A DNA stretch of 64,000 bases from Mytilus trossulus (taxonomy: Eukaryota). Below the pieces are notes generated by a model. The model worked only from the letters and a program-made list of their open reading frames with translations, made no database searches and was not told the origin of the DNA. Below are positions 1-64,000 of the stretch, in pieces (within the stretch, counting starts at the first letter, position 1; every line of letters starts with the position of its first letter). The DNA is taken from assembly GCF_036588685.1 (NCBI RefSeq), contig NC_086380.1, positions 73,036,001 through 73,100,000 on the forward strand, in the 5' to 3' direction. A program made the position numbers and the translations under genes.

Positions 1-2197
1 CAAAAACAGAAGTTGAAAAATGTGCTGAAAATGAAACAAAAACAGGGTAAGAATACTTTTTTTTGTTATTAAGCTTTCAAAAATAATTAAACTTGCTTAA
101 AAAAGTCACTTATAAACAACTATGAAGAAAAAGGCATGTGTCTTATATGCCAATTCTTTAAATGTGACAGCTGAAGAAAATGCAAGCTAGGATAATACTT
201 ATTTTTAAATTTCTAGTCCTATATATATTTTCAAGAATTAAATAGTGCATGATTTTTATATATAATATATATAAAAACACAGGCAAAGAAAAAAATATGC
301 ACTTTTGAGAGTAAATTTGATCAAAAAGCTTATTTAAAGAAAACACTATTGTAAGGGAGGTAATTCAAAATAAAATTATTTTCACCTTTCCAAAACTTAG
401 TTTTTACAAATAAAAAACTAATTCACTTCAATTTTGGCAACATTTTTCAACTTCAGGTCAGAGAAAAATAGTTTTCGACTCCTTCGGATCAATGAACTTG
501 AACAGATGTGGAATGAGGTTTTCATAGAACACAGAAAAATATCCCCTATGTGTACAGGGTTCATATCATGGGATTTAAGTGCAGAACAGCAAAGAGGGGC
601 TGCCTGGAGGGAAAAGGCAAGCTGCAATAAGTGTTCTTACCATTCAAAAATGTTCAACCTTTACAATGAGGTGATCGCAAAGAAACGTGGTCGTCGAACA
701 GCAGCTATTAATCTATCCATACAAGTCGCACTTAATCACATAGCTATCAGCACAACTGGTCTACAGAAATTATTTCTTGGTTCTAATATACCAGCTCCTT
801 CCACTTCAAGTATGCAACACAGTGCTAATGTTGTTTCTGAAATTATAGAAGAGTACAATCAAAAGGATTTGGTTCAGAAAAGAAAATTACTGAAGGAAAT
901 AAACATATTAAGAGGTGATAATCCTAATATTATTAACATTCAGGCCGACGGAATGTATAATAACCCTATTTATTCCGGAATGGGTAAAACACCATTTCAA
1001 CCAGCTACTCAATGTACGTATAACATGTTAGAAAATAATACTTATAAGCACAGTATTGTAAGCACAAGACAAGTGTCTAAGCTTTGCTCAAATAAGAGTG
1101 AACATAAAACAAAAACAAAAGTTAAATCTCACAAAGGTCACTGTTCCGCAAACATTGAAATGCATGACAGCATAGGCAGTGAGGAGCGATGGGCTAAAGA
1201 CTGCTTGTTAGACCTGAAAAATGATGGTCTGGAAGTTCAAGAAATTACCACTGACCCTGACAGCAGTGCATTTAGAGCTGCAGAGTCTCTCTTTAAAGCT
1301 GGTACAACCAATACTCAGCCAATTCATTTTCTAGATACGAGACATGTGTCCGCAAATCATAGAAATTTTATTAAAAAAATGTCAGGTCTGAAGGAAATAA
1401 TGCCGGCACGATTAGTTTCAGAGAAAGATAAAATGCTAAAAAGGTTTGCATTAGATATGGCAGCACGTTGTCAGGCAGAGTACAATGCTGCCTTTGATAA
1501 ATTCAATATGGACTCTGTACGGGTAAAAGTTCACCTATCATATGCATGTCATGCTATAGTTTCTTGCTATCAGGGCGATCATAATGGTTGTACAAAATAT
1601 TCCCTTGTTTGTTCAAATAGGAACAGTTTGAAGACATGGACTGAAAAATCAGCTTATCTGAAAAATAACTTTAAATTAAATAAATCAGAGAACACAGCAG
1701 CATTGTTACGTGAATGCGTAAAATATCGCCTTGGACCTACCATGCTAAACTGTACATGCAAAAACACTAACACACAAAAAGCTGAAGCAACTAACCGTGC
1801 AATACGTGCAACTGTACCTAGCAATGTAACATTTACCAGAAACTATAAAGGAAGGGTACATACAGCTATACATAACGTAAATAATGGCCCTGGAGAATCC
1901 ATCGTGAAACTCTGTCAAGCGGCTGGGGTTCCCATCGAACCAGGAAGTCGTGCTGCCCATGGTCTGAAAAATATTCAACAACATAATGAAAAACATAAAT
2001 CATATAAGCAGTCAAAGAAGTACACAGATCAGAGATGCTCAAAAAAACATGAACTGTATAAAATATATGATGAGCATCAAGAGGAAAAAGACTATGAGAA
2101 AAACAAACTTTTACCGACAAAACGACTGGCCGCAAAACAACCTCAAGAGTATTCGTTTGCCAAAAAACTCCGATCAAGACATGTTAAAAATAAATAA
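1..2197 (+). CDS. DDD/E transposase (Kolobok/Mutator-like), 5' partial: end of exon 1 (1-46), intron 47-456, exon 2 457-2197
   Basis: Putative catalytic motifs IQADG (D at 947-949), ITTDPDS (D at 1253-1255), FLDTRH (DxxH) and TQKAEATN (E at 1784-1786). N-terminal H/C...CNKC Zn-binding-like motif; basic C-terminus. Confidence 0.85.
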
Positions 2198-2207
2198 ATT
2201 ACCTGCA

Positions 2208-2666
2208 TCAGATAAGACAACACGGTAAATGATTATTTGTACACTGTTTTGCCCGTCTACAGAAAATTCTCTCTATGTTTATACTGTGCGACTCTAAGAT
2301 CAGGTGCTCCGGTTTAATACATTTGGGGTTATGGCAAAGGTGTGAAATATCTAAAGGATCACCGTTTGGAGAGAAACGGGGAAGATTTTCTTTTAATATT
2401 CTTTTATCTAGCATATAAGATAATCTGTGAGCTCTTTCAAGAGTTCTAGTGCCATCAGGCCAATTCATAACTTTTTTCCCATAGACCCCATGCTCCAAAG
2501 CTCCAACCCACACTGTACAGTCATAATTTCCATGATTTTTTTCACTTTTCTTAGACAAAGCTAAAGCCAATGCATTCCAAAATGATTCCATGTTGTTTCT
2601 GTAAAATGAAAACCCAAAAGGGGTCCGAAATTGGGATCCCAGGGAGGCTGAGGGGTGAATTCCCAT
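2208..2666 (-). CDS. His-Me finger / His-Cys box (I-PpoI-like HNH) endonuclease; probable true start is the ATG at 2591 (127 aa)
   Basis: Motifs CTVWVG...GVYG...AHRLSY...SHLCHNPKCIKPEHLILESHSINIERIFC, plus C-terminal C-x5-C-x3-H-x2-C. This is typical of Zn-binding His-Me homing-type endonucleases. Confidence 0.9.
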   Translation of the reverse strand: MGIHPSASLGSQFRTPFGFSFYRNNMESFWNALALALSKKSEKNHGNYDCTVWVGALEHGVYGKKVMNWPDGTRTLERAHRLSYMLDKRILKENLPRFSPNGDPLDISHLCHNPKCIKPEHLILESHSINIERIFCRRAKQCTNNHLPCCLI

Positions 2667-2673
2667 TATTTAC
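2599..2673 (-). other. Putative 75-nt 5'-UTR intron of the endonuclease gene (representative)
   Basis: Minus strand reads TATAAG|GTAAAT...GGTTTTCATTTTACAG|AAACAACATG: canonical donor, pyrimidine-rich acceptor, then ATG in AAC context. Confidence 0.6.
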
Positions 2674-3381
2674 CTTATACTGTACTTTCAAACCCCTTTT
2701 AGTATCAAAATATTCTTATATTCTTGTTGTTATATATGTAAGTAATAGAAAATAATAAGTTACAATGGTAGTTTTTTCATTATTGTATTTTTATAGTACT
2801 TCTAGTAACTATACCCTGTTTGCGGCAAGATGTGTTTTTTTCCTGTTCACTATTTTTTTTTTTTTTATGCAATTTATATTTTTTTTTGTCTACTTAATAA
2901 ACTCATTATATATTTGTGTTTTTCTTGTACCTTTGTGTAATAGCTATTTGAATCATGGTTAGTTTTACTACAATCTGTTTATTTTGTAGAATTTTTGTTT
3001 TCTTTATGTACTATACCATAAAATGCATAAAAAGTTGTCATACAAGCTTCAAAAAACTATCCCTATAACAAAAACATACACCTTATCTTTACTTTCTGTT
3101 TATGTTATAGCACACAAGCCTGTCAGCACTGATAAAAAAATTCAATGAAGAGAGGTCAAATTATATGAACTTGTCAAATTACAAAATAATGAGATTAACC
3201 ATCATGATGATTTTTATATGATTTATATAAAAAATCTTACATCTGGGGTCACCTTCAGTACCATCTGATATAAACAAAAAACTTAGTCATTCATGATTGT
3301 TTAGTTGTAAGGTCCTATATTTGTTATTTAAATATTAAAATACTGGAATAAAGTGCATTTCAAACAATTCTTACAATAACA

Positions 3382-5807
3382 ATGGGTCTAATCCCATGGC
3401 GTCTAAGGAAATACACATTTCAGAAAGGAAACAAGCCATATAATAAGGGGAAAAAATACAGAAATAAGACTTTACCTGCTGAAAAAGGCAAATTTGTGAG
3501 ACTACCAAAAGACTTGTATGACTTAGTGACTAAATCTGTTCATAATAAGAATGTTCAACTCATTCCTGCCTCTACAAAATCAGCTCGCTTTCTAAGGCCG
3601 AAGCCTCCGACAAAAACAGAAGTTGAAAAATGTGCTGAAAATGAAACAAAAACAGGGTAAGAATACTTTTTTTTGTTATTAAGCTTTCAAAAATAATTAA
3701 ACTTGCTTAAAAAAGTCACTTATAAACAACTATGAAGAAAAAGGCATGTGTCTTATATGCCAATTCTTTAAATGTGACAGCTGAAGAAAATGCAAGCTAG
3801 GATAATACTTATTTTTAAATTTCTAGTCCTATATATATTTTCAAGAATTAAATAGTGCATGATTTTTATATATAATATATATAAAAACACAGGCAAAGAA
3901 AAAAATATGCACTTTTGAGAGTAAATTTGATCATTAAGCTTATTTAAAGAAAACACTATTGTAAGGGAGGTAATTCAAAATAAAATTATTTTCACCTTTC
4001 CAAAACTTAGTTTTTACAAATAAAAAACTAATTCACTTCAATTTTGGCAACATTTTTCAACTTCAGGTCAGAGAAAAATAGTTTTCGACTCCTTCGGATC
4101 AATGAACTTGAACAGATGTGGAATGAGGTTTTCATAGAACACAGAAAAATATCCCCTATGTGTACAGGGTTCATATCATGGGATTTAAGTGCAGAACAGC
4201 AAAGAGGGGCTGCCTGGAGGGAAAAGGCAAGCTGCAATAAGTGTTCTTACCATTCAAAAATGTTCAACCTTTACAATGAGGTGATCGCAAAGAAACGTGG
4301 TCGTCGAACAGCAGCTATTAATCTATCCATACAAGTCGCACTTAATCACATAGCTATCAGCACAACTGGTCTACAGAAATTATTTCTTGGTTCTAATATA
4401 CCAGCTCCTTCCACTTCAAGTATGCAACACAGTGCTAATGTTGTTTCTGAAATTATAGAAGAGTACAATCAAAAGGATTTGGTTCAGAAAAGAAAATTAC
4501 TGAAGGAAATAAACATATTAAGAGGTGATAATCCTAATATTATTAACATTCAGGCCGACGGAATGTATAATAACCCTATTTATTCCGGAATGGGTAAAAC
4601 ACCATTTCAACCAGCTACTCAATGTACGTATAACATGTTAGAAAATAATACTTATAAGCACAGTATTGTAAGCACAAGACAAGTGTCTAAGCTTTGCTCA
4701 AATAAGAGTGAACATAAAACAAAAACAAAAGTTAAATCTCACAAAGGTCACTGTTCCGCAAACATTGAAATGCATGACAGCATAGGCAGTGAGGAGCGAT
4801 GGGCTAAAGACTGCTTGTTAGACCTGAAAAATGATGGTCTGGAAGTTCAAGAAATTACCACTGACCCTGACAGCAGTGCATTTAGAGCTGCAGAGTCTCT
4901 CTTTAAAGCTGGTACAACCAATACTCAGCCAATTCATTTTCTAGATACGAGACATGTGTCCGCAAATCATAGAAATTTTATTAAAAAAATGTCAGGTCTG
5001 AAGGAAATAATGCCGGCACGATTAGTTTCAGAGAAAGATAAAATGCTAAAAAGGTTTGCATTAGATATGGCAGCACGTTGTCAGGCAGAGTACAATGCTG
5101 CCTTTGATAAATTCAATATGGACTCTGTACGGGTAAAAGTTCACCTATCATATGCATGTCATGCTATAGTTTCTTGCTATCAGGGCGATCATAATGGTTG
5201 TACAAAATATTCCCTTGTTTGTTCAAATAGGAACAGTTTGAAGACATGGACTGAAAAATCAGCTTATCTGAAAAATAACTTTAAATTAAATAAATCAGAG
5301 AACACAGCAGCATTGTTACGTGAATGCGTAAAATATCGCCTTGGACCTACCATGCTAAACTGTACATGCAAAAACACTAACACACAAAAAGCTGAAGCAA
5401 CTAACCGTGCAATACGTGCAACTGTACCTAGCAATGTAACATTTACCAGAAACTATAAAGGAAGGGTACATACAGCTATACATAACGTAAATAATGGCCC
5501 TGGAGAATCCATCGTGAAACTCTGTCAAGCGGCTGGGGTTCCCATCGAACCAGGAAGTCGTGCTGCCCATGGTCTGAAAAATATTCAACAACATAATGAA
5601 AAACATAAATCATATAAGCAGTCAAAGAAGTACACAGATCAGAGATGCTCAAAAAAACATGAACTGTATAAAATATATGATGAGCATCAAGAGGAAAAAG
5701 ACTATGAGAAAAACAAACTTTTACCGACAAAACGACTGGCCGCAAAACAACCTCAAGAGTATTCGTTTGCCAAAAAACTCCGATCAAGACATGTTAAAAA
5801 TAAATAA
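3382..5807 (+). CDS. DDD/E transposase, join(3382..3656,4067..5807), 671 aa
   Basis: ATG in ACAATGG context; donor GG|GTAAGA; branch-like CTAAT at 4028-4032; acceptor TTTTTCAACTTCAG|G. The phase-2 splice joins the 92-aa and 587-aa ORFs in frame. DDE motifs as in copy 1. Confidence 0.87.
3657..4066 (+). other. 410-bp spliceosomal GT-AG intron of the transposase gene (representative; present in every unit)
   Basis: GTAAGA...CTAAT...TTTTTCAACTTCAG, very AT-rich; removal restores the reading frame. Confidence 0.85.
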
Positions 5808-5817
5808 ATTACCTGCA

Positions 5818-6276
5818 TCAGATAAGACAACACGGTAAATGATTATTTGTACACTGTTTTGCCCGTCTACAGAAAATTCTCTCTATGTTTATACTGTGCG
5901 ACTCTAAGATCAGGTGCTCCGGTTTAATACATTTGGGGTTATGGCAAAGGTGTGAAATATCTAAAGGATCACCGTTTGGAGAGAAACGGGGAAGATTTTC
6001 TTTTAATATTCTTTTATCTAGCATATAAGATAATCTGTGAGCTCTTTCAAGAGTTCTAGTGCCATCAGGCCAATTCATAACTTTTTTCCCATAGACCCCA
6101 TGCTCCAAAGCTCCAACCCACACTGTACAGTCATAATTTCCATGATTTTTTTCACTTTTCTTAGACAAAGCTAAAGCCAATGCATTCCAAAATGATTCCA
6201 TGTTGTTTCTGTAAAATGAAAACCCAAAAGGGGTCCGAAATTGGGATCCCAGGGAGGCTGAGGGGTGAATTCCCAT
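5818..6276 (-). CDS. His-Me finger endonuclease
   Basis: Identical copy of 2208-2666. Confidence 0.9.
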   Translation of the reverse strand: MGIHPSASLGSQFRTPFGFSFYRNNMESFWNALALALSKKSEKNHGNYDCTVWVGALEHGVYGKKVMNWPDGTRTLERAHRLSYMLDKRILKENLPRFSPNGDPLDISHLCHNPKCIKPEHLILESHSINIERIFCRRAKQCTNNHLPCCLI

Positions 6277-6991
6277 TATTTACCTTATACTGTACTTTCA
6301 AACCCCTTTTAGTATCAAAATATTCTTATATTCTTGTTGTTATATATGTAAGTAATAGAAAATAATAAGTTACAATGGTAGTTTTTTCATTATTGTATTT
6401 TTATAGTACTTCTAGTAACTATACCCTGTTTGCGGCAAGATGTGTTTTTTTCCTGTTCACTATTTTTTTTTTTTTTATGCAATTTATATTTTTTTTTGTC
6501 TACTTAATAAACTCATTATATATTTGTGTTTTTCTTGTACCTTTGTGTAATAGCTATTTGAATCATGGTTAGTTTTACTACAATCTGTTTATTTTGTAGA
6601 ATTTTTGTTTTCTTTATGTACTATACCATAAAATGCATAAAAAGTTGTCATACAAGCTTCAAAAAACTATCCCTATAACAAAAACATACACCTTATCTTT
6701 ACTTTCTGTTTATGTTATAGCACACAAGCCTGTCAGCACTGATAAAAAAATTCAATGAAGAGAGGTCAAATTATATGAACTTGTCAAATTACAAAATAAT
6801 GAGATTAACCATCATGATGATTTTTATATGATTTATATAAAAAATCTTACATCTGGGGTCACCTTCAGTACCATCTGATATAAACAAAAAACTTAGTCAT
6901 TCATGATTGTTTAGTTGTAAGGTCCTATATTTGTTATTTAAATATTAAAATACTGGAATAAAGTGCATTTCAAACAATTCTTACAATAACA

Positions 6992-9417
6992 ATGGGTCTA
7001 ATCCCATGGCGTCTAAGGAAATACACATTTCAGAAAGGAAACAAGCCATATAATAAGGGGAAAAAATACAGAAATAAGACTTTACCTGCTGAAAAAGGCA
7101 AATTTGTGAGACTACCAAAAGACTTGTATGACTTAGTGACTAAATCTGTTCATAATAAGAATGTTCAACTCATTCCTGCCTCTACAAAATCAGCTCGCTT
7201 TCTAAGGCCGAAGCCTCCGACAAAAACAGAAGTTGAAAAATGTGCTGAAAATGAAACAAAAACAGGGTAAGAATACTTTTTTTTGTTATTAAGCTTTCAA
7301 AAATAATTAAACTTGCTTAAAAAAGTCACTTATAAACAACTATGAAGAAAAAGGCATGTGTCTTATATGCCAATTCTTTAAATGTGACAGCTGAAGAAAA
7401 TGCAAGCTAGGATAATACTTATTTTTAAATTTCTAGTCCTATATATATTTTCAAGAATTAAATAGTGCATGATTTTTATATATAATATATATAAAAACAC
7501 AGGCAAAGAAAAAAATATGCACTTTTGAGAGTAAATTTGATCATTAAGCTTATTTAAAGAAAACACTATTGTAAGGGAGGTAATTCAAAATAAAATTATT
7601 TTCACCTTTCCAAAACTTAGTTTTTACAAATAAAAAACTAATTCACTTCAATTTTGGCAACATTTTTCAACTTCAGGTCAGAGAAAAATAGTTTTCGACT
7701 CCTTCGGATCAATGAACTTGAACAGATGTGGAATGAGGTTTTCATAGAACACAGAAAAATATCCCCTATGTGTACAGGGTTCATATCATGGGATTTAAGT
7801 GCAGAACAGCAAAGAGGGGCTGCCTGGAGGGAAAAGGCAAGCTGCAATAAGTGTTCTTACCATTCAAAAATGTTCAACCTTTACAATGAGGTGATCGCAA
7901 AGAAACGTGGTCGTCGAACAGCAGCTATTAATCTATCCATACAAGTCGCACTTAATCACATAGCTATCAGCACAACTGGTCTACAGAAATTATTTCTTGG
8001 TTCTAATATACCAGCTCCTTCCACTTCAAGTATGCAACACAGTGCTAATGTTGTTTCTGAAATTATAGAAGAGTACAATCAAAAGGATTTGGTTCAGAAA
8101 AGAAAATTACTGAAGGAAATAAACATATTAAGAGGTGATAATCCTAATATTATTAACATTCAGGCCGACGGAATGTATAATAACCCTATTTATTCCGGAA
8201 TGGGTAAAACACCATTTCAACCAGCTACTCAATGTACGTATAACATGTTAGAAAATAATACTTATAAGCACAGTATTGTAAGCACAAGACAAGTGTCTAA
8301 GCTTTGCTCAAATAAGAGTGAACATAAAACAAAAACAAAAGTTAAATCTCACAAAGGTCACTGTTCCGCAAACATTGAAATGCATGACAGCATAGGCAGT
8401 GAGGAGCGATGGGCTAAAGACTGCTTGTTAGACCTGAAAAATGATGGTCTGGAAGTTCAAGAAATTACCACTGACCCTGACAGCAGTGCATTTAGAGCTG
8501 CAGAGTCTCTCTTTAAAGCTGGTACAACCAATACTCAGCCAATTCATTTTCTAGATACGAGACATGTGTCCGCAAATCATAGAAATTTTATTAAAAAAAT
8601 GTCAGGTCTGAAGGAAATAATGCCGGCACGATTAGTTTCAGAGAAAGATAAAATGCTAAAAAGGTTTGCATTAGATATGGCAGCACGTTGTCAGGCAGAG
8701 TACAATGCTGCCTTTGATAAATTCAATATGGACTCTGTACGGGTAAAAGTTCACCTATCATATGCATGTCATGCTATAGTTTCTTGCTATCAGGGCGATC
8801 ATAATGGTTGTACAAAATATTCCCTTGTTTGTTCAAATAGGAACAGTTTGAAGACATGGACTGAAAAATCAGCTTATCTGAAAAATAACTTTAAATTAAA
8901 TAAATCAGAGAACACAGCAGCATTGTTACGTGAATGCGTAAAATATCGCCTTGGACCTACCATGCTAAACTGTACATGCAAAAACACTAACACACAAAAA
9001 GCTGAAGCAACTAACCGTGCAATACGTGCAACTGTACCTAGCAATGTAACATTTACCAGAAACTATAAAGGAAGGGTACATACAGCTATACATAACGTAA
9101 ATAATGGCCCTGGAGAATCCATCGTGAAACTCTGTCAAGCGGCTGGGGTTCCCATCGAACCAGGAAGTCGTGCTGCCCATGGTCTGAAAAATATTCAACA
9201 ACATAATGAAAAACATAAATCATATAAGCAGTCAAAGAAGTACACAGATCAGAGATGCTCAAAAAAACATGAACTGTATAAAATATATGATGAGCATCAA
9301 GAGGAAAAAGACTATGAGAAAAACAAACTTTTACCGACAAAACGACTGGCCGCAAAACAACCTCAAGAGTATTCGTTTGCCAAAAAACTCCGATCAAGAC
9401 ATGTTAAAAATAAATAA
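6992..9417 (+). CDS. DDD/E transposase, two exons (intron 7267-7676)
   Basis: Identical copy of 3382-5807. Confidence 0.87.
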
Positions 9418-9427
9418 ATTACCTGCA

Positions 9428-9886
9428 TCAGATAAGACAACACGGTAAATGATTATTTGTACACTGTTTTGCCCGTCTACAGAAAATTCTCTCTATGTTT
9501 ATACTGTGCGACTCTAAGATCAGGTGCTCCGGTTTAATACATTTGGGGTTATGGCAAAGGTGTGAAATATCTAAAGGATCACCGTTTGGAGAGAAACGGG
9601 GAAGATTTTCTTTTAATATTCTTTTATCTAGCATATAAGATAATCTGTGAGCTCTTTCAAGAGTTCTAGTGCCATCAGGCCAATTCATAACTTTTTTCCC
9701 ATAGACCCCATGCTCCAAAGCTCCAACCCACACTGTACAGTCATAATTTCCATGATTTTTTTCACTTTTCTTAGACAAAGCTAAAGCCAATGCATTCCAA
9801 AATGATTCCATGTTGTTTCTGTAAAATGAAAACCCAAAAGGGGTCCGAAATTGGGATCCCAGGGAGGCTGAGGGGTGAATTCCCAT
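9428..9886 (-). CDS. His-Me finger endonuclease
   Basis: Identical copy. Confidence 0.9.
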   Translation of the reverse strand: MGIHPSASLGSQFRTPFGFSFYRNNMESFWNALALALSKKSEKNHGNYDCTVWVGALEHGVYGKKVMNWPDGTRTLERAHRLSYMLDKRILKENLPRFSPNGDPLDISHLCHNPKCIKPEHLILESHSINIERIFCRRAKQCTNNHLPCCLI

Positions 9887-10601
9887 TATTTACCTTATAC
9901 TGTACTTTCAAACCCCTTTTAGTATCAAAATATTCTTATATTCTTGTTGTTATATATGTAAGTAATAGAAAATAATAAGTTACAATGGTAGTTTTTTCAT
10001 TATTGTATTTTTATAGTACTTCTAGTAACTATACCCTGTTTGCGGCAAGATGTGTTTTTTTCCTGTTCACTATTTTTTTTTTTTTTATGCAATTTATATT
10101 TTTTTTTGTCTACTTAATAAACTCATTATATATTTGTGTTTTTCTTGTACCTTTGTGTAATAGCTATTTGAATCATGGTTAGTTTTACTACAATCTGTTT
10201 ATTTTGTAGAATTTTTGTTTTCTTTATGTACTATACCATAAAATGCATAAAAAGTTGTCATACAAGCTTCAAAAAACTATCCCTATAACAAAAACATACA
10301 CCTTATCTTTACTTTCTGTTTATGTTATAGCACACAAGCCTGTCAGCACTGATAAAAAAATTCAATGAAGAGAGGTCAAATTATATGAACTTGTCAAATT
10401 ACAAAATAATGAGATTAACCATCATGATGATTTTTATATGATTTATATAAAAAATCTTACATCTGGGGTCACCTTCAGTACCATCTGATATAAACAAAAA
10501 ACTTAGTCATTCATGATTGTTTAGTTGTAAGGTCCTATATTTGTTATTTAAATATTAAAATACTGGAATAAAGTGCATTTCAAACAATTCTTACAATAAC
10601 A

Positions 10602-13027
10602 ATGGGTCTAATCCCATGGCGTCTAAGGAAATACACATTTCAGAAAGGAAACAAGCCATATAATAAGGGGAAAAAATACAGAAATAAGACTTTACCTGCT
10701 GAAAAAGGCAAATTTGTGAGACTACCAAAAGACTTGTATGACTTAGTGACTAAATCTGTTCATAATAAGAATGTTCAACTCATTCCTGCCTCTACAAAAT
10801 CAGCTCGCTTTCTAAGGCCGAAGCCTCCGACAAAAACAGAAGTTGAAAAATGTGCTGAAAATGAAACAAAAACAGGGTAAGAATACTTTTTTTTGTTATT
10901 AAGCTTTCAAAAATAATTAAACTTGCTTAAAAAAGTCACTTATAAACAACTATGAAGAAAAAGGCATGTGTCTTATATGCCAATTCTTTAAATGTGACAG
11001 CTGAAGAAAATGCAAGCTAGGATAATACTTATTTTTAAATTTCTAGTCCTATATATATTTTCAAGAATTAAATAGTGCATGATTTTTATATATAATATAT
11101 ATAAAAACACAGGCAAAGAAAAAAATATGCACTTTTGAGAGTAAATTTGATCATTAAGCTTATTTAAAGAAAACACTATTGTAAGGGAGGTAATTCAAAA
11201 TAAAATTATTTTCACCTTTCCAAAACTTAGTTTTTACAAATAAAAAACTAATTCACTTCAATTTTGGCAACATTTTTCAACTTCAGGTCAGAGAAAAATA
11301 GTTTTCGACTCCTTCGGATCAATGAACTTGAACAGATGTGGAATGAGGTTTTCATAGAACACAGAAAAATATCCCCTATGTGTACAGGGTTCATATCATG
11401 GGATTTAAGTGCAGAACAGCAAAGAGGGGCTGCCTGGAGGGAAAAGGCAAGCTGCAATAAGTGTTCTTACCATTCAAAAATGTTCAACCTTTACAATGAG
11501 GTGATCGCAAAGAAACGTGGTCGTCGAACAGCAGCTATTAATCTATCCATACAAGTCGCACTTAATCACATAGCTATCAGCACAACTGGTCTACAGAAAT
11601 TATTTCTTGGTTCTAATATACCAGCTCCTTCCACTTCAAGTATGCAACACAGTGCTAATGTTGTTTCTGAAATTATAGAAGAGTACAATCAAAAGGATTT
11701 GGTTCAGAAAAGAAAATTACTGAAGGAAATAAACATATTAAGAGGTGATAATCCTAATATTATTAACATTCAGGCCGACGGAATGTATAATAACCCTATT
11801 TATTCCGGAATGGGTAAAACACCATTTCAACCAGCTACTCAATGTACGTATAACATGTTAGAAAATAATACTTATAAGCACAGTATTGTAAGCACAAGAC
11901 AAGTGTCTAAGCTTTGCTCAAATAAGAGTGAACATAAAACAAAAACAAAAGTTAAATCTCACAAAGGTCACTGTTCCGCAAACATTGAAATGCATGACAG
12001 CATAGGCAGTGAGGAGCGATGGGCTAAAGACTGCTTGTTAGACCTGAAAAATGATGGTCTGGAAGTTCAAGAAATTACCACTGACCCTGACAGCAGTGCA
12101 TTTAGAGCTGCAGAGTCTCTCTTTAAAGCTGGTACAACCAATACTCAGCCAATTCATTTTCTAGATACGAGACATGTGTCCGCAAATCATAGAAATTTTA
12201 TTAAAAAAATGTCAGGTCTGAAGGAAATAATGCCGGCACGATTAGTTTCAGAGAAAGATAAAATGCTAAAAAGGTTTGCATTAGATATGGCAGCACGTTG
12301 TCAGGCAGAGTACAATGCTGCCTTTGATAAATTCAATATGGACTCTGTACGGGTAAAAGTTCACCTATCATATGCATGTCATGCTATAGTTTCTTGCTAT
12401 CAGGGCGATCATAATGGTTGTACAAAATATTCCCTTGTTTGTTCAAATAGGAACAGTTTGAAGACATGGACTGAAAAATCAGCTTATCTGAAAAATAACT
12501 TTAAATTAAATAAATCAGAGAACACAGCAGCATTGTTACGTGAATGCGTAAAATATCGCCTTGGACCTACCATGCTAAACTGTACATGCAAAAACACTAA
12601 CACACAAAAAGCTGAAGCAACTAACCGTGCAATACGTGCAACTGTACCTAGCAATGTAACATTTACCAGAAACTATAAAGGAAGGGTACATACAGCTATA
12701 CATAACGTAAATAATGGCCCTGGAGAATCCATCGTGAAACTCTGTCAAGCGGCTGGGGTTCCCATCGAACCAGGAAGTCGTGCTGCCCATGGTCTGAAAA
12801 ATATTCAACAACATAATGAAAAACATAAATCATATAAGCAGTCAAAGAAGTACACAGATCAGAGATGCTCAAAAAAACATGAACTGTATAAAATATATGA
12901 TGAGCATCAAGAGGAAAAAGACTATGAGAAAAACAAACTTTTACCGACAAAACGACTGGCCGCAAAACAACCTCAAGAGTATTCGTTTGCCAAAAAACTC
13001 CGATCAAGACATGTTAAAAATAAATAA
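10602..13027 (+). CDS. DDD/E transposase, two exons (intron 10877-11286)
   Basis: Identical copy. Confidence 0.87.
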
Positions 13028-13037
13028 ATTACCTGCA

Positions 13038-13496
13038 TCAGATAAGACAACACGGTAAATGATTATTTGTACACTGTTTTGCCCGTCTACAGAAAATTCT
13101 CTCTATGTTTATACTGTGCGACTCTAAGATCAGGTGCTCCGGTTTAATACATTTGGGGTTATGGCAAAGGTGTGAAATATCTAAAGGATCACCGTTTGGA
13201 GAGAAACGGGGAAGATTTTCTTTTAATATTCTTTTATCTAGCATATAAGATAATCTGTGAGCTCTTTCAAGAGTTCTAGTGCCATCAGGCCAATTCATAA
13301 CTTTTTTCCCATAGACCCCATGCTCCAAAGCTCCAACCCACACTGTACAGTCATAATTTCCATGATTTTTTTCACTTTTCTTAGACAAAGCTAAAGCCAA
13401 TGCATTCCAAAATGATTCCATGTTGTTTCTGTAAAATGAAAACCCAAAAGGGGTCCGAAATTGGGATCCCAGGGAGGCTGAGGGGTGAATTCCCAT
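13038..13496 (-). CDS. His-Me finger endonuclease
   Basis: Identical copy. Confidence 0.9.
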   Translation of the reverse strand: MGIHPSASLGSQFRTPFGFSFYRNNMESFWNALALALSKKSEKNHGNYDCTVWVGALEHGVYGKKVMNWPDGTRTLERAHRLSYMLDKRILKENLPRFSPNGDPLDISHLCHNPKCIKPEHLILESHSINIERIFCRRAKQCTNNHLPCCLI

Positions 13497-14211
13497 TATT
13501 TACCTTATACTGTACTTTCAAACCCCTTTTAGTATCAAAATATTCTTATATTCTTGTTGTTATATATGTAAGTAATAGAAAATAATAAGTTACAATGGTA
13601 GTTTTTTCATTATTGTATTTTTATAGTACTTCTAGTAACTATACCCTGTTTGCGGCAAGATGTGTTTTTTTCCTGTTCACTATTTTTTTTTTTTTTATGC
13701 AATTTATATTTTTTTTTGTCTACTTAATAAACTCATTATATATTTGTGTTTTTCTTGTACCTTTGTGTAATAGCTATTTGAATCATGGTTAGTTTTACTA
13801 CAATCTGTTTATTTTGTAGAATTTTTGTTTTCTTTATGTACTATACCATAAAATGCATAAAAAGTTGTCATACAAGCTTCAAAAAACTATCCCTATAACA
13901 AAAACATACACCTTATCTTTACTTTCTGTTTATGTTATAGCACACAAGCCTGTCAGCACTGATAAAAAAATTCAATGAAGAGAGGTCAAATTATATGAAC
14001 TTGTCAAATTACAAAATAATGAGATTAACCATCATGATGATTTTTATATGATTTATATAAAAAATCTTACATCTGGGGTCACCTTCAGTACCATCTGATA
14101 TAAACAAAAAACTTAGTCATTCATGATTGTTTAGTTGTAAGGTCCTATATTTGTTATTTAAATATTAAAATACTGGAATAAAGTGCATTTCAAACAATTC
14201 TTACAATAACA

Positions 14212-16637
14212 ATGGGTCTAATCCCATGGCGTCTAAGGAAATACACATTTCAGAAAGGAAACAAGCCATATAATAAGGGGAAAAAATACAGAAATAAGAC
14301 TTTACCTGCTGAAAAAGGCAAATTTGTGAGACTACCAAAAGACTTGTATGACTTAGTGACTAAATCTGTTCATAATAAGAATGTTCAACTCATTCCTGCC
14401 TCTACAAAATCAGCTCGCTTTCTAAGGCCGAAGCCTCCGACAAAAACAGAAGTTGAAAAATGTGCTGAAAATGAAACAAAAACAGGGTAAGAATACTTTT
14501 TTTTGTTATTAAGCTTTCAAAAATAATTAAACTTGCTTAAAAAAGTCACTTATAAACAACTATGAAGAAAAAGGCATGTGTCTTATATGCCAATTCTTTA
14601 AATGTGACAGCTGAAGAAAATGCAAGCTAGGATAATACTTATTTTTAAATTTCTAGTCCTATATATATTTTCAAGAATTAAATAGTGCATGATTTTTATA
14701 TATAATATATATAAAAACACAGGCAAAGAAAAAAATATGCACTTTTGAGAGTAAATTTGATCATTAAGCTTATTTAAAGAAAACACTATTGTAAGGGAGG
14801 TAATTCAAAATAAAATTATTTTCACCTTTCCAAAACTTAGTTTTTACAAATAAAAAACTAATTCACTTCAATTTTGGCAACATTTTTCAACTTCAGGTCA
14901 GAGAAAAATAGTTTTCGACTCCTTCGGATCAATGAACTTGAACAGATGTGGAATGAGGTTTTCATAGAACACAGAAAAATATCCCCTATGTGTACAGGGT
15001 TCATATCATGGGATTTAAGTGCAGAACAGCAAAGAGGGGCTGCCTGGAGGGAAAAGGCAAGCTGCAATAAGTGTTCTTACCATTCAAAAATGTTCAACCT
15101 TTACAATGAGGTGATCGCAAAGAAACGTGGTCGTCGAACAGCAGCTATTAATCTATCCATACAAGTCGCACTTAATCACATAGCTATCAGCACAACTGGT
15201 CTACAGAAATTATTTCTTGGTTCTAATATACCAGCTCCTTCCACTTCAAGTATGCAACACAGTGCTAATGTTGTTTCTGAAATTATAGAAGAGTACAATC
15301 AAAAGGATTTGGTTCAGAAAAGAAAATTACTGAAGGAAATAAACATATTAAGAGGTGATAATCCTAATATTATTAACATTCAGGCCGACGGAATGTATAA
15401 TAACCCTATTTATTCCGGAATGGGTAAAACACCATTTCAACCAGCTACTCAATGTACGTATAACATGTTAGAAAATAATACTTATAAGCACAGTATTGTA
15501 AGCACAAGACAAGTGTCTAAGCTTTGCTCAAATAAGAGTGAACATAAAACAAAAACAAAAGTTAAATCTCACAAAGGTCACTGTTCCGCAAACATTGAAA
15601 TGCATGACAGCATAGGCAGTGAGGAGCGATGGGCTAAAGACTGCTTGTTAGACCTGAAAAATGATGGTCTGGAAGTTCAAGAAATTACCACTGACCCTGA
15701 CAGCAGTGCATTTAGAGCTGCAGAGTCTCTCTTTAAAGCTGGTACAACCAATACTCAGCCAATTCATTTTCTAGATACGAGACATGTGTCCGCAAATCAT
15801 AGAAATTTTATTAAAAAAATGTCAGGTCTGAAGGAAATAATGCCGGCACGATTAGTTTCAGAGAAAGATAAAATGCTAAAAAGGTTTGCATTAGATATGG
15901 CAGCACGTTGTCAGGCAGAGTACAATGCTGCCTTTGATAAATTCAATATGGACTCTGTACGGGTAAAAGTTCACCTATCATATGCATGTCATGCTATAGT
16001 TTCTTGCTATCAGGGCGATCATAATGGTTGTACAAAATATTCCCTTGTTTGTTCAAATAGGAACAGTTTGAAGACATGGACTGAAAAATCAGCTTATCTG
16101 AAAAATAACTTTAAATTAAATAAATCAGAGAACACAGCAGCATTGTTACGTGAATGCGTAAAATATCGCCTTGGACCTACCATGCTAAACTGTACATGCA
16201 AAAACACTAACACACAAAAAGCTGAAGCAACTAACCGTGCAATACGTGCAACTGTACCTAGCAATGTAACATTTACCAGAAACTATAAAGGAAGGGTACA
16301 TACAGCTATACATAACGTAAATAATGGCCCTGGAGAATCCATCGTGAAACTCTGTCAAGCGGCTGGGGTTCCCATCGAACCAGGAAGTCGTGCTGCCCAT
16401 GGTCTGAAAAATATTCAACAACATAATGAAAAACATAAATCATATAAGCAGTCAAAGAAGTACACAGATCAGAGATGCTCAAAAAAACATGAACTGTATA
16501 AAATATATGATGAGCATCAAGAGGAAAAAGACTATGAGAAAAACAAACTTTTACCGACAAAACGACTGGCCGCAAAACAACCTCAAGAGTATTCGTTTGC
16601 CAAAAAACTCCGATCAAGACATGTTAAAAATAAATAA
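14212..16637 (+). CDS. DDD/E transposase, two exons (intron 14487-14896)
   Basis: Identical copy. Confidence 0.87.
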
Positions 16638-16647
16638 ATTACCTGCA

Positions 16648-17106
16648 TCAGATAAGACAACACGGTAAATGATTATTTGTACACTGTTTTGCCCGTCTAC
16701 AGAAAATTCTCTCTATGTTTATACTGTGCGACTCTAAGATCAGGTGCTCCGGTTTAATACATTTGGGGTTATGGCAAAGGTGTGAAATATCTAAAGGATC
16801 ACCGTTTGGAGAGAAACGGGGAAGATTTTCTTTTAATATTCTTTTATCTAGCATATAAGATAATCTGTGAGCTCTTTCAAGAGTTCTAGTGCCATCAGGC
16901 CAATTCATAACTTTTTTCCCATAGACCCCATGCTCCAAAGCTCCAACCCACACTGTACAGTCATAATTTCCATGATTTTTTTCACTTTTCTTAGACAAAG
17001 CTAAAGCCAATGCATTCCAAAATGATTCCATGTTGTTTCTGTAAAATGAAAACCCAAAAGGGGTCCGAAATTGGGATCCCAGGGAGGCTGAGGGGTGAAT
17101 TCCCAT
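16648..17106 (-). CDS. His-Me finger endonuclease
   Basis: Identical copy. Confidence 0.9.
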   Translation of the reverse strand: MGIHPSASLGSQFRTPFGFSFYRNNMESFWNALALALSKKSEKNHGNYDCTVWVGALEHGVYGKKVMNWPDGTRTLERAHRLSYMLDKRILKENLPRFSPNGDPLDISHLCHNPKCIKPEHLILESHSINIERIFCRRAKQCTNNHLPCCLI

Positions 17107-17821
17107 TATTTACCTTATACTGTACTTTCAAACCCCTTTTAGTATCAAAATATTCTTATATTCTTGTTGTTATATATGTAAGTAATAGAAAATAATAAGT
17201 TACAATGGTAGTTTTTTCATTATTGTATTTTTATAGTACTTCTAGTAACTATACCCTGTTTGCGGCAAGATGTGTTTTTTTCCTGTTCACTATTTTTTTT
17301 TTTTTTATGCAATTTATATTTTTTTTTGTCTACTTAATAAACTCATTATATATTTGTGTTTTTCTTGTACCTTTGTGTAATAGCTATTTGAATCATGGTT
17401 AGTTTTACTACAATCTGTTTATTTTGTAGAATTTTTGTTTTCTTTATGTACTATACCATAAAATGCATAAAAAGTTGTCATACAAGCTTCAAAAAACTAT
17501 CCCTATAACAAAAACATACACCTTATCTTTACTTTCTGTTTATGTTATAGCACACAAGCCTGTCAGCACTGATAAAAAAATTCAATGAAGAGAGGTCAAA
17601 TTATATGAACTTGTCAAATTACAAAATAATGAGATTAACCATCATGATGATTTTTATATGATTTATATAAAAAATCTTACATCTGGGGTCACCTTCAGTA
17701 CCATCTGATATAAACAAAAAACTTAGTCATTCATGATTGTTTAGTTGTAAGGTCCTATATTTGTTATTTAAATATTAAAATACTGGAATAAAGTGCATTT
17801 CAAACAATTCTTACAATAACA

Positions 17822-20247: not shown

Positions 20248-20257
20248 ATTACCTGCA

Positions 20258-20716
20258 TCAGATAAGACAACACGGTAAATGATTATTTGTACACTGTTTT
20301 GCCCGTCTACAGAAAATTCTCTCTATGTTTATACTGTGCGACTCTAAGATCAGGTGCTCCGGTTTAATACATTTGGGGTTATGGCAAAGGTGTGAAATAT
20401 CTAAAGGATCACCGTTTGGAGAGAAACGGGGAAGATTTTCTTTTAATATTCTTTTATCTAGCATATAAGATAATCTGTGAGCTCTTTCAAGAGTTCTAGT
20501 GCCATCAGGCCAATTCATAACTTTTTTCCCATAGACCCCATGCTCCAAAGCTCCAACCCACACTGTACAGTCATAATTTCCATGATTTTTTTCACTTTTC
20601 TTAGACAAAGCTAAAGCCAATGCATTCCAAAATGATTCCATGTTGTTTCTGTAAAATGAAAACCCAAAAGGGGTCCGAAATTGGGATCCCAGGGAGGCTG
20701 AGGGGTGAATTCCCAT
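20258..20716 (-). CDS. His-Me finger endonuclease
   Basis: Identical copy. Confidence 0.9.
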   Translation of the reverse strand: MGIHPSASLGSQFRTPFGFSFYRNNMESFWNALALALSKKSEKNHGNYDCTVWVGALEHGVYGKKVMNWPDGTRTLERAHRLSYMLDKRILKENLPRFSPNGDPLDISHLCHNPKCIKPEHLILESHSINIERIFCRRAKQCTNNHLPCCLI

Positions 20717-23857: not shown

Positions 23858-23867
23858 ATTACCTGCA

Positions 23868-27467: not shown

Positions 27468-27477
27468 ATTACCTGCA

Positions 27478-31077: not shown

Positions 31078-31087
31078 ATTACCTGCA

Positions 31088-31546: not shown

Positions 31547-31559
31547 TATTTACCTTATA

Positions 31560-32018: not shown

Positions 32019-32022
32019 TATA

Positions 32023-39223: not shown

Positions 39224-39233
39224 ATTACCTGCA

Positions 39234-43296: not shown

Positions 43297-43306
43297 ATTA
43301 CCTGCA

Positions 43307-50005: not shown

Positions 50006-50105
50006 NNNNNNNNNNNNNNNNNNNNNNNNNNNNNNNNNNNNNNNNNNNNNNNNNNNNNNNNNNNNNNNNNNNNNNNNNNNNNNNNNNNNNNNNNNNNNNN
50101 NNNNN
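50006..50105. other. Assembly gap (100 N, unknown true size)
   Basis: Run of exactly 100 n; the same repeat lies on both sides in the same orientation but at different unit positions. Confidence 0.99.
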
Positions 50106-61508: not shown

Positions 61509-63934
61509 ATGGGTCTAATCCCATGGCGTCTAAGGAAATACACATTACAGAAAGGAAACAAGCCATATAATAAGGGGAAAAAATACAGAAATAAGACTTT
61601 ACCTGCTGAAAAAGGCAAATTTGTGAGACTACCAAAAGACTTGTATGACTTAGTGACTAAATCTGTTCATAATAAGAATGTTCAACTCATTCCTGCCTCT
61701 ACAAAATCAGCTCGCTTTCTAAGGCCGAAGCCTCCGACAAAAACAGAAGTTGAAAAATGTGCTGAAAATGAAACAAAAACAGGGTAAGAATACTTTTTTT
61801 TGTTATTAAGCTTTCAAAAATAATTAAACTTGCTTAAAAAAGTCACTTATAAACAACTATGAAGAAAAAGGCATGTGTCTTATATGCCAATTCTTTAAAT
61901 GTGACAGCTGAAGAAAATGCAAGCTAGGATAATACTTATTTTTAAATTTCTAGTCCTATATATATTTTCAAGAATTAAATAGTGCATGATTTTTATATAT
62001 AATATATATAAAAACACAGGCAAAGAAAAAAATATGCACTTTTGAGAGTAAATTTGATCAAAAAGCTTATTTAAAGAAAACACTATTGTAAGGGAGGTAA
62101 TTCAAAATAAAATTATTTTCACCTTTCCAAAACTTAGTTTTTACAAATAAAAAACTAATTCACTTCAATTTTGGCAACATTTTTCAACTTCAGGTCAGAG
62201 AAAAATAGTTTTCGACTCCTTCGGATCAATGAACTTGAACAGATGTGGAATGAGGTTTTCATAGAACACAGAAAAATATCCCCTATGTGTACAGGGTTCA
62301 TATCATGGGATTTAAGTGCAGAACAGCAAAGAGGGGCTGCCTGGAGGGAAAAGGCAAGCTGCAATAAGTGTTCTTACCATTCAAAAATGTTCAACCTTTA
62401 CAATGAGGTGATCGCAAAGAAACGTGGTCGTCGAACAGCAGCTATTAATCTATCCATACAAGTCGCACTTAATCACATAGCTATCAGCACAACTGGTCTA
62501 CAGAAATTATTTCTTGGTTCTAATATACCAGCTCCTTCCACTTCAAGTATGCAACACAGTGCTAATGTTGTTTCTGAAATTATAGAAGAGTACAATCAAA
62601 AGGATTTGGTTCAGAAAAGAAAATTACTGAAGGAAATAAACATATTAAGAGGTGATAATCCTAATATTATTAACATTCAGGCCGACGGAATGTATAATAA
62701 CCCTATTTATTCCGGAATGGGTAAAACACCATTTCAACCAGCTACTCAATGTACGTATAACATGTTAGAAAATAATACTTATAAGCACAGTATTGTAAGC
62801 ACAAGACAAGTGTCTAAGCTTTGCTCAAATAAGAGTGAACATAAAACAAAAACAAAAGTTAAATCTCACAAAGGTCACTGTTCCGCAAACATTGAAATGC
62901 ATGACAGCATAGGCAGTGAGGAGCGATGGGCTAAAGACTGCTTGTTAGACCTGAAAAATGATGGTCTGGAAGTTCAAGAAATTACCACTGACCCTGACAG
63001 CAGTGCATTTAGAGCTGCAGAGTCTCTCTTTAAAGCTGGTACAACCAATACTCAGCCAATTCATTTTCTAGATACGAGACATGTGTCCGCAAATCATAGA
63101 AATTTTATTAAAAAAATGTCAGGTCTGAAGGAAATAATGCCGGCACGATTAGTTTCAGAGAAAGATAAAATGCTAAAAAGGTTTGCATTAGATATGGCAG
63201 CACGTTGTCAGGCAGAGTACAATGCTGCCTTTGATAAATTCAATATGGACTCTGTACGGGTAAAAGTTCACCTATCATATGCATGTCATGCTATAGTTTC
63301 TTGCTATCAGGGCGATCATAATGGTTGTACAAAATATTCCCTTGTTTGTTCAAATAGGAACAGTTTGAAGACATGGACTGAAAAATCAGCTTATCTGAAA
63401 AATAACTTTAAATTAAATAAATCAGAGAACACAGCAGCATTGTTACGTGAATGCGTAAAATATCGCCTTGGACCTACCATGCTAAACTGTACATGCAAAA
63501 ACACTAACACACAAAAAGCTGAAGCAACTAACCGTGCAATACGTGCAACTGTACCTAGCAATGTAACATTTACCAGAAACTATAAAGGAAGGGTACATAC
63601 AGCTATACATAACGTAAATAATGGCCCTGGAGAATCCATCGTGAAACTCTGTCAAGCGGCTGGGGTTCCCATCGAACCAGGAAGTCGTGCTGCCCATGGT
63701 CTGAAAAATATTCAACAACATAATGAAAAACATAAATCATATAAGCAGTCAAAGAAGTACACAGATCAGAGATGCTCAAAAAAACATGAACTGTATAAAA
63801 TATATGATGAGCATCAAGAGGAAAAAGACTATGAGAAAAACAAACTTTTACCGACAAAACGACTGGCCGCAAAACAACCTCAAGAGTATTCGTTTGCCAA
63901 AAAACTCCGATCAAGACATGTTAAAAATAAATAA
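61509..63934 (+). CDS. DDD/E transposase, two exons (intron 61784-62193)
   Basis: Same protein except F13L (TTT>TTA at 61547). Confidence 0.87.
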
Positions 63935-63944
63935 ATTACCTGCA

Positions 63945-64000
63945 TCAGATAAGACAACACGGTAAATGATTATTTGTACACTGTTTTGCCCGTCTACAGA
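63945..64000 (-). CDS. His-Me finger endonuclease, 3' end only (cut by the window edge)
   Basis: Matches 2208-2263 of the first copy. Confidence 0.75.
   Translation of the reverse strand, partial: CRRAKQCTNNHLPCCLI

What the first reader, a model, noticed from the sequence alone, without database searches (positions are those of the whole stretch)
1..64000. Coding mega-satellite of a DDE-transposase + His-Me homing-type endonuclease transposon (KolobokP-like)
Seen: at least 64 kb of head-to-tail 3,610-bp units, each with an intact spliced DDD/E transposase and an intact convergent His-Cys-box nuclease (16 complete copies of each). Established (from memory): a DDE transposase plus His-Me nuclease inside TIR-bearing long direct repeats is the KolobokP architecture described by Kojima and Bao in invertebrates, so the gene pair is probably not new. 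Inference: cut-and-paste elements normally disperse. A long array made mostly of internal regions lacking transposon ends implies another amplification route, such as rolling-circle copying of an excised INT circle or break-induced unequal exchange. The element's own nucleases could drive either.
Basis: partly seen in the sequence, partly recalled or inferred. Interest (0 to 1): 0.85.

Follow-up and report, generated by a model that had tools for sequence, protein, structure and literature searches.

The report
Mussel KolobokP transposon core tandem array
The window is a long head-to-tail array of the internal, two-gene part of an already catalogued mussel DNA transposon (KolobokP-5_MyEd family) that has lost most of its mobile end-repeats; it is an unusually large example of a multimer type described in 2022, not a new kind of element.

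Summary
The whole window is a 3,610-bp tandem array with 17 anchor-to-anchor units that differ by 0-2 bases. It holds 16 identical copies each of a 587-aa transposase ORF, a 92-aa upstream exon and a convergent 152-aa His-Cys-box nuclease.

The element is a known one. Its 459-bp end repeat, 10-bp TIR, 4,532-bp canonical length and core start and end match KolobokP-5_MyEd of Mytilus edulis (Kojima & Bao 2022). That paper already describes multimers, directly abutted cores sharing one TATA (up to four), and an unequal-crossover model.

What is new is the scale. At least 17 cores lie in 64 kb or more, 14 of the 16 visible junctions lack the end repeat, and all ORFs are open.

All window units carry a private Arg440Cys change that is absent from five independent data sets. 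The array is therefore a local clonal expansion of one unit.

No core-to-core junction was seen outside the window. A 31-kb stretch is perfectly periodic, and an N gap sits inside the array. Copy number and array ends therefore remain unverified.

Splicing and transcription were not shown. The scan noted KolobokP-like elements on other pieces of this genome.

The parts
1..64000 (.). Head-to-tail array, basic period 3,610 bp. Both ends of the array lie outside the window.
   Evidence: k-mer spacing, anchor positions and unit-by-unit comparison.
2676..2679 (.). Representative INT-INT junction, a single TATA between ...TTTACCT and CTGTACTTT... The same empty junction is at 6286, 9896, 13506, 17116, 20726, 24336, 27946, 36092, 43775, 47384, 53584, 57193 and 60803. 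Filled junctions are at 31556 (two LTDRs) and 39702 (one LTDR).
   Evidence: (flank search). The paper reports one TATA at INT-INT junctions of KolobokP-1_MeMe.
2680..6285 (+). One complete internal region (INT, 3,606 bp). With its two TATAs it is 3,614 bp, and 459+3,614+459 = 4,532, the full length listed for KolobokP-5_MyEd.
3382..3656 (+). Predicted transposase exon 1 (ATG at 3382; 91 codons plus 2 bases). It encodes a basic N-terminal region.
   Evidence: BLASTP to the N-terminus of an annotated Mytilus edulis protein (P0045) gives E 2e-4. The same N-terminal motifs appear in six homologues in alignment A1.
3657..4066 (+). Predicted 410-nt intron (GTAAGA ... polypyrimidine tract ... CAG).
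   Evidence: Read from the sequence; the frame is kept across the join. It is not confirmed: RNA-library contigs run straight through it (X15 records 16 and 17).
4067..5807 (+). Predicted transposase exon 2 with stop codon. It holds the DDE core: D172, D274 and E451, DxxH at 301-304, and Cys-rich insertions (numbering of the 587-aa ORF).
5818..6276 (-). [quoted passage not shown] Its ATG lies 10 bp from the INT right end.
   Evidence: PF05551 at 57.9 bits (cut-off 27). The alignment to I-PpoI keeps S97, H98, C100, C105, H110, E114, N119 and C125.
31560..32018 (+). LTDR copy 1 (459 bp; 10-bp TIR GGTTGCACTT/AAGTGCAACC; TATA on both sides).
   Evidence: It resembles KolobokP-3_MyCo-LTDR as printed in the paper's supplement.
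32023..32481 (+). LTDR copy 2, identical to copy 1 and separated from it by one TATA.
32009..32032 (.). Perfect 24-bp palindrome made by two abutted LTDR ends around TATA.
39706..40164 (+). LTDR copy 3, identical to copies 1 and 2, single, between two INTs.
326..31559 (.). Stretch of perfect 3,610-bp periodicity (31.2 kb, no difference between successive units).
1751..1753 (+). Codon 440 of the transposase ORF. It is TGT (Cys) in all 17 readable units of the window and CGT (Arg) in every outside source.
   Evidence: place 42850, T>C in X1, X10, X15 and X16; L001; P0001-P0003. The column is K or R in 90 of 108 homologues.
50006..50105 (.). Assembly gap inside the array. Its flanks correspond to unit coordinates 1687 and 2809.

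Best explanation
The window is a multimer of a KolobokP DNA transposon of a Mytilus mussel, family KolobokP-5_MyEd or its counterpart in a sister species. The canonical element is LTDR-INT-LTDR, with every module bounded by TATA.

Shown: here the 3.6-kb internal region (INT) is repeated at least 17 times. INT carries the Kolobok DDE transposase gene and a convergent I-PpoI-like nuclease gene. 14 of the 16 visible junctions have no 459-bp LTDR and keep one TATA. All units share a private Arg440Cys change, and variants lie in blocks.

Inferred history: one LTDR-less INT-TATA-INT junction arose when the transposase excised an LTDR, which has its own 10-bp TIRs. That 3,610-bp unit was then amplified in place by unequal sister-chromatid or homologue exchange, or by replication-coupled break repair, in the 3,610-bp register. 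The LTDRs at two junctions are either survivors or re-insertions into the junction TATA. The LTDR dimer is best read as such an insertion.

Double-strand breaks made by the element's own nuclease or transposase may have stimulated the exchange. That step is untested.

INT units without LTDRs have no transposase recognition ends, so they can spread only by host recombination or replication.
For: Identity:
- PF20700 at 4e-46 and PF05551 at 1.7e-15.
- I-PpoI alignment with the catalytic residues kept.
- 110 bivalve homologues, the best from Mytilus edulis and M. galloprovincialis.
- DDE and DxxH conserved.
- Full length 4,532, LTDR 459, TIR 10 and the INT start and end match KolobokP-5_MyEd in Table S1 and Data S1 of PMC9587614.

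Known precedent: LTDR-(INT)n-LTDR, one TATA at INT-INT, LTDR excision and the unequal-crossover model.

Clonal local origin: Cys440 is in all 17 units and Arg in X1, X10, X15, X16, L001 and P0001-3. Apart from that site, the 4,073-bp contig of X1 is identical to the window.

In-array duplication or conversion: TT in eight adjacent units and AA in the other ten copies of the site.

No ends in INT: no TIR-like site with one mismatch or fewer.
Against: - No INT-INT junction was seen in any outside data. X1, X10, X15 and metagenome contig L001 all show INT-TATA-LTDR. The empty junction is so far known only from this assembly.
- The 31-kb perfectly periodic block and the internal N gap mean the unit count is not independently supported.
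- Nothing here separates one excision followed by amplification from many independent excisions or from a circle-based route.
- No evidence bears on whether the nuclease takes part.
Confidence: 0.6

Rival explanations
1. The array began as a canonical (LTDR-INT)n multimer. It lost its LTDRs one by one through many independent transposase-mediated excisions, each leaving a single TATA. The two filled junctions are the ones not yet excised.
For: LTDR excision from KolobokP copies is documented, with loss of 3-4 bp at the INT-INT junction. Outside data show LTDR and INT at a 1:1 ratio in a contig that closes on itself with period 4,073 (X1). That is what an (LTDR-INT)n array or a monomer with identical LTDRs gives.
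Against: It needs at least 14 excisions, all leaving exactly the same footprint. The paper reports variable 1-5 bp loss on either side. It does not explain the LTDR-TATA-LTDR dimer. The 31-kb block without a single difference fits recent duplication of an already LTDR-less unit better.
Confidence: 0.15
2. An INT-only circle (3,610 bp, one TATA) was released when both LTDR ends facing the INT were cut, leaving an LTDR-TATA-LTDR dimer behind. The circle was copied by rolling-circle or break-induced replication into a concatemer that was integrated or retained at the locus.
For: All junctions are identical and all units share one private substitution. An LTDR-TATA-LTDR dimer, the expected reciprocal product, sits in the array. 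The paper considers circular intermediates for KolobokP.
Against: There is no direct evidence for circles. The only self-closing contig seen has period 4,073, not 3,610, and tandem DNA gives the same picture. The block of eight TT units needs later in-array exchange anyway. The LTDR dimer is equally explained by an LTDR inserting into the TATA next to another LTDR.
Confidence: 0.1
3. The length of the array, or the array itself, is an assembly artefact. A short multimer or a few near-identical copies were threaded repeatedly through a repeat loop of the assembly graph and then scaffolded across a gap.
For: 31.2 kb have no difference between units. An N gap lies inside the array with out-of-phase flanks. 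No INT-INT junction appears in four outside runs and one metagenome contig.
Against: The window has ordered, non-periodic variation that a simple loop would not give. Examples are a TT block versus AA blocks, two T13 junctions, three private SNPs, and LTDRs at only two junctions with one of them double. The precise LTDR-less junction with one TATA is a biologically documented structure, and assemblers do not invent it.
Confidence: 0.15

Closest known systems
KolobokP-5_MyEd (Mytilus edulis), Kojima & Bao 2022, Mob DNA 13:24, Table S1 / Data S1
   Same: Full length 4,532 bp equals 459 + 3,614 + 459 computed from the window. LTDR is 459 bp and the TIR 10 bp. INT begins TATACTGTACTTTCAAACC... and ends ...GGGGTGAATTCCCATTATTTACCTTATA. 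It has the same gene pair in the same convergent order.
   Different: The catalogue lists 32 LTDR and 6 INT copies with the TSD undetermined. Here at least 17 INTs lie in one array, mostly without LTDRs, and all carry Cys at codon 440. A full-length alignment to the consensus was not made, because the supplement text cannot be passed to the tools.
KolobokP multimers LTDR-(INT)n-LTDR (e.g. KolobokP-1_MeMe, n up to 4) in the same paper
   Same: INTs abut directly and share a single TATA. LTDRs are present at only some junctions. Units are near-identical.
   Different: The scale differs: at least 17 units over 64 kb or more, against 2-4. The outer LTDRs and TSDs are not visible here. An LTDR-TATA-LTDR dimer lies inside the array.
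Tandem arrays of LTR-type elements (TRIM/Cassandra) and IS26 translocatable-unit arrays in bacteria
   Same: A composite element with direct terminal repeats is multiplied head to tail by recombination rather than by transposition. The paper itself draws this analogy.
   Different: In those arrays the terminal repeat is kept between units. Here the repeat is mostly gone, and the homology used must be the internal region itself.
I-PpoI, His-Cys box homing endonuclease of a Physarum group I intron (PDB 1A73, 1CZ0)
   Same: Same Pfam family (PF05551). S97, H98, C100, C105, H110, E114, N119 and C125 are aligned and kept.
   Different: It is encoded in a DNA transposon, not in an rDNA intron. The target site is unknown. 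Only about 40 residues align by sequence (E 0.006).

Membership tests
KolobokP lineage of Kolobok DNA transposons | DDD/E transposase with the C/DxxH signature after the second D and a Cys-rich (zinc-finger) insertion between it and the catalytic E | tested here: met
   D172, D274/D276, D301xxH304 and E451 are conserved in 105-110 of 110 homologues. C346, C378, C386 and C393 are invariant in A1 between DxxH and E.
KolobokP lineage of Kolobok DNA transposons | [quoted passage not shown] | tested here: met
   The 152-aa ORF at 2208-2666 (-) starts 11 bp after the transposase stop at 2197. PF05551 at 1.7e-15.
KolobokP lineage of Kolobok DNA transposons | Long terminal direct repeats of about 450 or about 660 bp with their own short TIRs and termini 5'-RR...YY-3' | tested here: met
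   459-bp module with a 10-bp perfect TIR and termini GG...CC.
KolobokP lineage of Kolobok DNA transposons | Composite order LTDR-INT-LTDR | tested here: inconclusive
   In the window only 2 of 16 junctions hold an LTDR, and no INT has an LTDR on both sides. Outside data for the same sequence show INT flanked by LTDR edges on both sides (X10) and a 4,073-bp self-closing LTDR+INT contig (X1). L001 shows INT-TATA-LTDR.
KolobokP lineage of Kolobok DNA transposons | 3-5 bp target-site duplication at the outer ends of the insertion or multimer | not testable with these tools
   The array ends lie outside the window.
Family KolobokP-5_MyEd | Sequence and dimensions of the published consensus | tested here: met
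   Length, LTDR length, TIR length and both INT termini agree. Only the termini and dimensions were compared, not the full length.
His-Cys box homing endonucleases (I-PpoI group, PF05551) | His-Me finger catalytic residues H98 and N119 with H110, S97 and E114 | tested here: met
   In the phmmer alignment to 1EVW/1CZ0, SHLCHNPKCIKPEHLILESHSIN pairs with SHLCHNTRCHNPLHLCWES..DDN.
His-Cys box homing endonucleases (I-PpoI group, PF05551) | Eight Cys/His forming two zinc sites | tested here: inconclusive
   C100, C105 and C125 are aligned, and a C-x-H-x-CC tail is visible. The N-terminal ligands were not aligned, and no structure was predicted.
His-Cys box homing endonucleases (I-PpoI group, PF05551) | Encoded within a group I intron and homing into an intron-less allele | tested here: not met
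   The gene lies in a DNA transposon. No Rfam family, including group I introns, matches one unit plus LTDR.
MuDR/Mutator superfamily (the name Pfam gives PF20700) | Mutator-type transposase, without a zinc finger between the second D and E according to PMC9587614; long TIRs and 8-11 bp TSDs from general knowledge | tested here: not met
   PF20700 matches. However, invariant cysteines lie between DxxH and E, the TIRs are 10 bp, and the flanking repeat is 4 bp. The element equals a catalogued Kolobok family.
Satellite DNA (macro/mega-satellite) | Long head-to-tail array whose size is supported by independent reads or depth | not tested
   The array is present in the assembly.

The most novel reading that the evidence does not exclude
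The internal region of a KolobokP element has become a self-contained, gene-bearing satellite. It amplifies without transposon ends by an LTDR-independent route. In that route its own His-Cys-box nuclease, or an INT circle, supplies the breaks or templates, so this would be a transposon caught turning into a coding tandem repeat. The LTDR dimer with its perfect 24-bp palindrome would be the reciprocal product or the nuclease's substrate.
Probability: 0.15. Interest if true: 0.7.

Novelty: new member of a known kind. Interest (0 to 1): 0.35.

Why it matters
KolobokP is the only eukaryotic DNA-transposon lineage known to carry a homing-type nuclease. The proposal that this nuclease drives multimer formation was still called unconfirmed in 2026 (PMC13565253).

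If confirmed by reads, an array of at least 17 near-identical cores that mostly lack the LTDRs would be a natural test case. It would show that multimers can keep growing when the supposed LTDR cleavage or exchange sites are gone.

It also offers defined substrates for a cleavage assay: the INT-INT, INT-LTDR and palindromic LTDR-LTDR junctions. The private Arg440Cys marker allows the expansion to be traced in populations.

For genome annotation, it warns that dozens of intact transposase genes at one locus may be a single clonal block.

Tried and rejected
- The genome search 'own': no whole genome is held for this window. Array ends, genome-wide copy number and other loci could not be examined.
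- Read laying: the only call was used on two RNA-library runs and two independent DNA-type runs, all kept as contigs. It gave no INT-INT joint and no splice joint. RNA-library contigs (95-99% alike) run through the predicted intron, so neither splicing nor transcription is shown.
- Metagenome scan for the INT right end: one contig, with an INT-TATA-LTDR junction.
- Rfam scan of one unit plus LTDR: nothing.
- Search for TIR-like sites or 4-bp-centred palindromes in INT as candidate nuclease or transposase sites: none convincing.
- The Pfam name 'Mutator-like' was considered and rejected as the superfamily assignment (see membership test).
- The spliced transposase was handled exon by exon by reference.
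- The N gap was not filled.
- I did not run a fold prediction, a second large protein search or complex prediction. Pfam above its cut-off and the I-PpoI alignment already settle the nuclease family, and no binding claim is made.
- Full alignment to the published consensus was left out, because the supplement sequence has no reference usable by the tools.


Full report
**1. The observation**

The window is one tandem array.
- 40,606 25-mers recur at a spacing of 3,610 bp.
- An anchor 40-mer occurs 18 times, defining 17 units.
- Twelve units are 3,610 bp and differ from the first by 0-2 bases.
- Two units are 3,609 bp because a T-run is 13 instead of 14.
- One unit is 4,073 bp and one is 4,536 bp, which is one or two extra 463-bp pieces.
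- One unit holds the N run.

The gap flanks were tested first. The left flank stops at unit coordinate 1687, inside the transposase ORF. The right flank resumes at 2809 in the same orientation and register. At least 1,121 bp, plus any number of whole units, are therefore missing. The 100 N are nominal, and nothing can be said about continuity or frame. The gap was not filled.

Each unit carries a 587-aa ORF, a 92-aa ORF upstream of it and a convergent 152-aa ORF. There are 16 letter-identical copies of each. The remaining copies carry one synonymous change, P122L or F13L, or are cut by the gap.

**2. What the genes are**

The large ORF matches Pfam PF20700 at 4e-46. The small ORF matches PF05551, the zinc-binding loop region of homing endonucleases, at 1.7e-15, well above its cut-off.

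The small ORF aligns to I-PpoI chains of the PDB. S97, H98, C100, C105, H110, E114, N119 and C125 are all kept.

The large ORF has 110 homologues. The closest (84-98%) are from Mytilus edulis, M. galloprovincialis and an ENA assembly. Others come from Pinctada, Mercenaria and Magallana. Earlier notes of this scan also call this genome a Mytilus mussel.

In an alignment of all 110, D172, D274, D301xxH304 and E451 are conserved in 105-110 sequences. Invariant cysteines lie between DxxH and E. According to Kojima & Bao, that feature separates Kolobok from MuDR, P and hAT. The Pfam label 'Mutator-like' is therefore only a label.

The upstream 92-aa ORF is homologous to the N-terminus of annotated relatives (E 2e-4 to P0045; shared motifs in six sequences). 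A canonical GTAAGA donor at 3657 and a CAG acceptor ending at 4066 join it in frame to the large ORF. The exons were examined separately by reference, and the joined protein was not built or searched.

The splice is not confirmed. Contigs from RNA libraries run through the intron. Those contigs may derive from DNA or from unspliced RNA of a 95-99% similar copy, so transcription is not shown either.

**3. What the element is**

The 463-bp extra is a 459-bp module with a perfect 10-bp TIR (GGTTGCACTT / AAGTGCAACC, termini GG...CC) plus TATA. Three identical copies exist.

Every module boundary is a TATA. This holds for INT-TATA-INT (14 junctions), INT-TATA-LTDR-TATA-INT (one) and INT-TATA-LTDR-TATA-LTDR-TATA-INT (one).

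It defines KolobokP as LTDR-INT-LTDR with a transposase and a convergent I-PpoI-like nuclease.

Its Table S1 lists KolobokP-5_MyEd of Mytilus edulis with full length 4,532, LTDR 459 and TIR 10. From the window, 459 + 3,614 + 459 = 4,532. The printed consensus of KolobokP-5_MyEd-I starts and ends like the window's INT. The LTDR resembles the printed KolobokP-3_MyCo LTDR. The family is thus already catalogued.

**4. What was already known about arrays**

The same paper reports several relevant points:
- multimers (LTDR-INT)n-LTDR;
- directly abutted INTs, LTDR-(INT)n-LTDR, with n up to 4;
- only one TATA at such junctions in KolobokP-1_MeMe;
- evidence that solo LTDRs are excised;
- models of unequal crossover, circular LTDR-INT units and nuclease-induced unequal crossover.

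It also notes that tandem insertions are under-counted because long repeats assemble poorly. A 2026 review still calls the nuclease model unconfirmed.

**5. What is new here**

(a) Scale. At least 17 INTs lie in 64 kb or more, with both array ends outside the window.

(b) Almost all junctions are LTDR-less. INT has no TIR-like site, so these units cannot be moved by the transposase.

(c) All 17 readable units have TGT (Cys) at codon 440. Two independent DNA-type runs, two RNA-library runs, a metagenome contig and the three closest database proteins all have CGT (Arg). Apart from this base, the 4,073-bp contig of run X1 is identical to the window. The column is K or R in 90 of 108 homologues, and no homologue has Cys. 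The array is therefore a clonal, very recent expansion of one variant unit. An open reading frame does not prove an active transposase.

(d) Variants lie in blocks. TT is found in eight adjacent units and AA in the others. This needs duplication or conversion inside the array.

(e) An LTDR-TATA-LTDR dimer forms a perfect 24-bp palindrome. The paper speculated that this kind of abutted-TIR site could be a target of the dimeric nuclease.

**6. Limits**

- No INT-INT junction was found outside the window. X1 gives a contig that closes on itself with period 4,073 (LTDR+INT). X10 gives INT with LTDR edges on both sides. X15 and the metagenome contig L001 show INT-TATA-LTDR.
- These are assembled contigs that drop rare variants.
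- Positions 326-31559 are perfectly periodic, so the unit number there rests on the assembler's read lengths.
Array ends and copy number could not be obtained.

**7. Mechanism**

Best supported (0.6): an LTDR was excised from a multimer, leaving INT-TATA-INT. This 3,610-bp unit was then multiplied in place by unequal exchange or break repair in the INT register. The LTDRs now present are survivors or re-insertions into the junction TATA.

The structure, the clonality and the blockwise variants are shown. The order of events and any role of the nuclease are inferred.

The rivals are many independent excisions (0.15), an INT circle copied by rolling-circle replication (0.1) and inflation of the array by the assembler (0.15). 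Their tests are listed under decisive next steps.

**8. Verdict**

The gene pair, the family and the multimer type are already published. The window is an unusually large and clean instance, a new member of a known kind, of moderate interest mainly as a test case for the multimerisation model.

Noticed in passing
window 32009-32032: The junction of the two adjacent LTDRs is a perfect 24-bp palindrome (AAGTGCAACC TATA GGTTGCACTT). This is the kind of symmetric site a dimeric I-PpoI-like nuclease could recognise. It sits uncut in the chromosome.
   Followed up: partly
window 1751-1753 and the same codon in every unit (e.g. 42850-42852): Private Arg440Cys in the transposase of all array units, at a position that is K or R in 83% of 108 homologues and lies 11 residues before the catalytic E451. 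The array's transposase may be impaired.
   Followed up: partly
window 39230-43300 as laid, run X10 (and X13 of the same study): Two very small runs (27.6 and 12 million letters) hold 96-97% of the element. In X10 the INT contig has depth 156 and LTDR-internal contigs have depth 1,650-7,300. Either the library is not random shotgun, or the element and especially its LTDR are extremely abundant in that organism.
   Followed up: no
window 39704-40352 in run X15: In one RNA-type library the LTDR plus the first 184 nt of INT has about 14 times the contig depth of the coding parts (144 versus 6-10). This could mean LTDR-driven transcripts or many solo LTDRs within other transcripts.
   Followed up: no
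window 2666-2680 (and each junction): The nuclease ATG lies only 10 bp from the INT edge. Its upstream region is therefore the LTDR in canonical copies, but the left end of the next INT in the array. Loss of the LTDR changes whatever promoter the nuclease gene uses.
   Followed up: no
window 41935-42963 in run X15: One RNA-library contig joins 41935 to 42963, skipping 1,027 bp inside the transposase ORF. This may be an internally deleted (non-autonomous) copy, as described for KolobokP-1_MeMe.
   Followed up: no
window 43775-43970 and 53584-53780; 50106-50150: The T-run about 170 bp right of the junction is 13 in two units, 14 in the others, and one base longer just after the gap. This may be real length variation or long-read homopolymer error.
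   Followed up: partly
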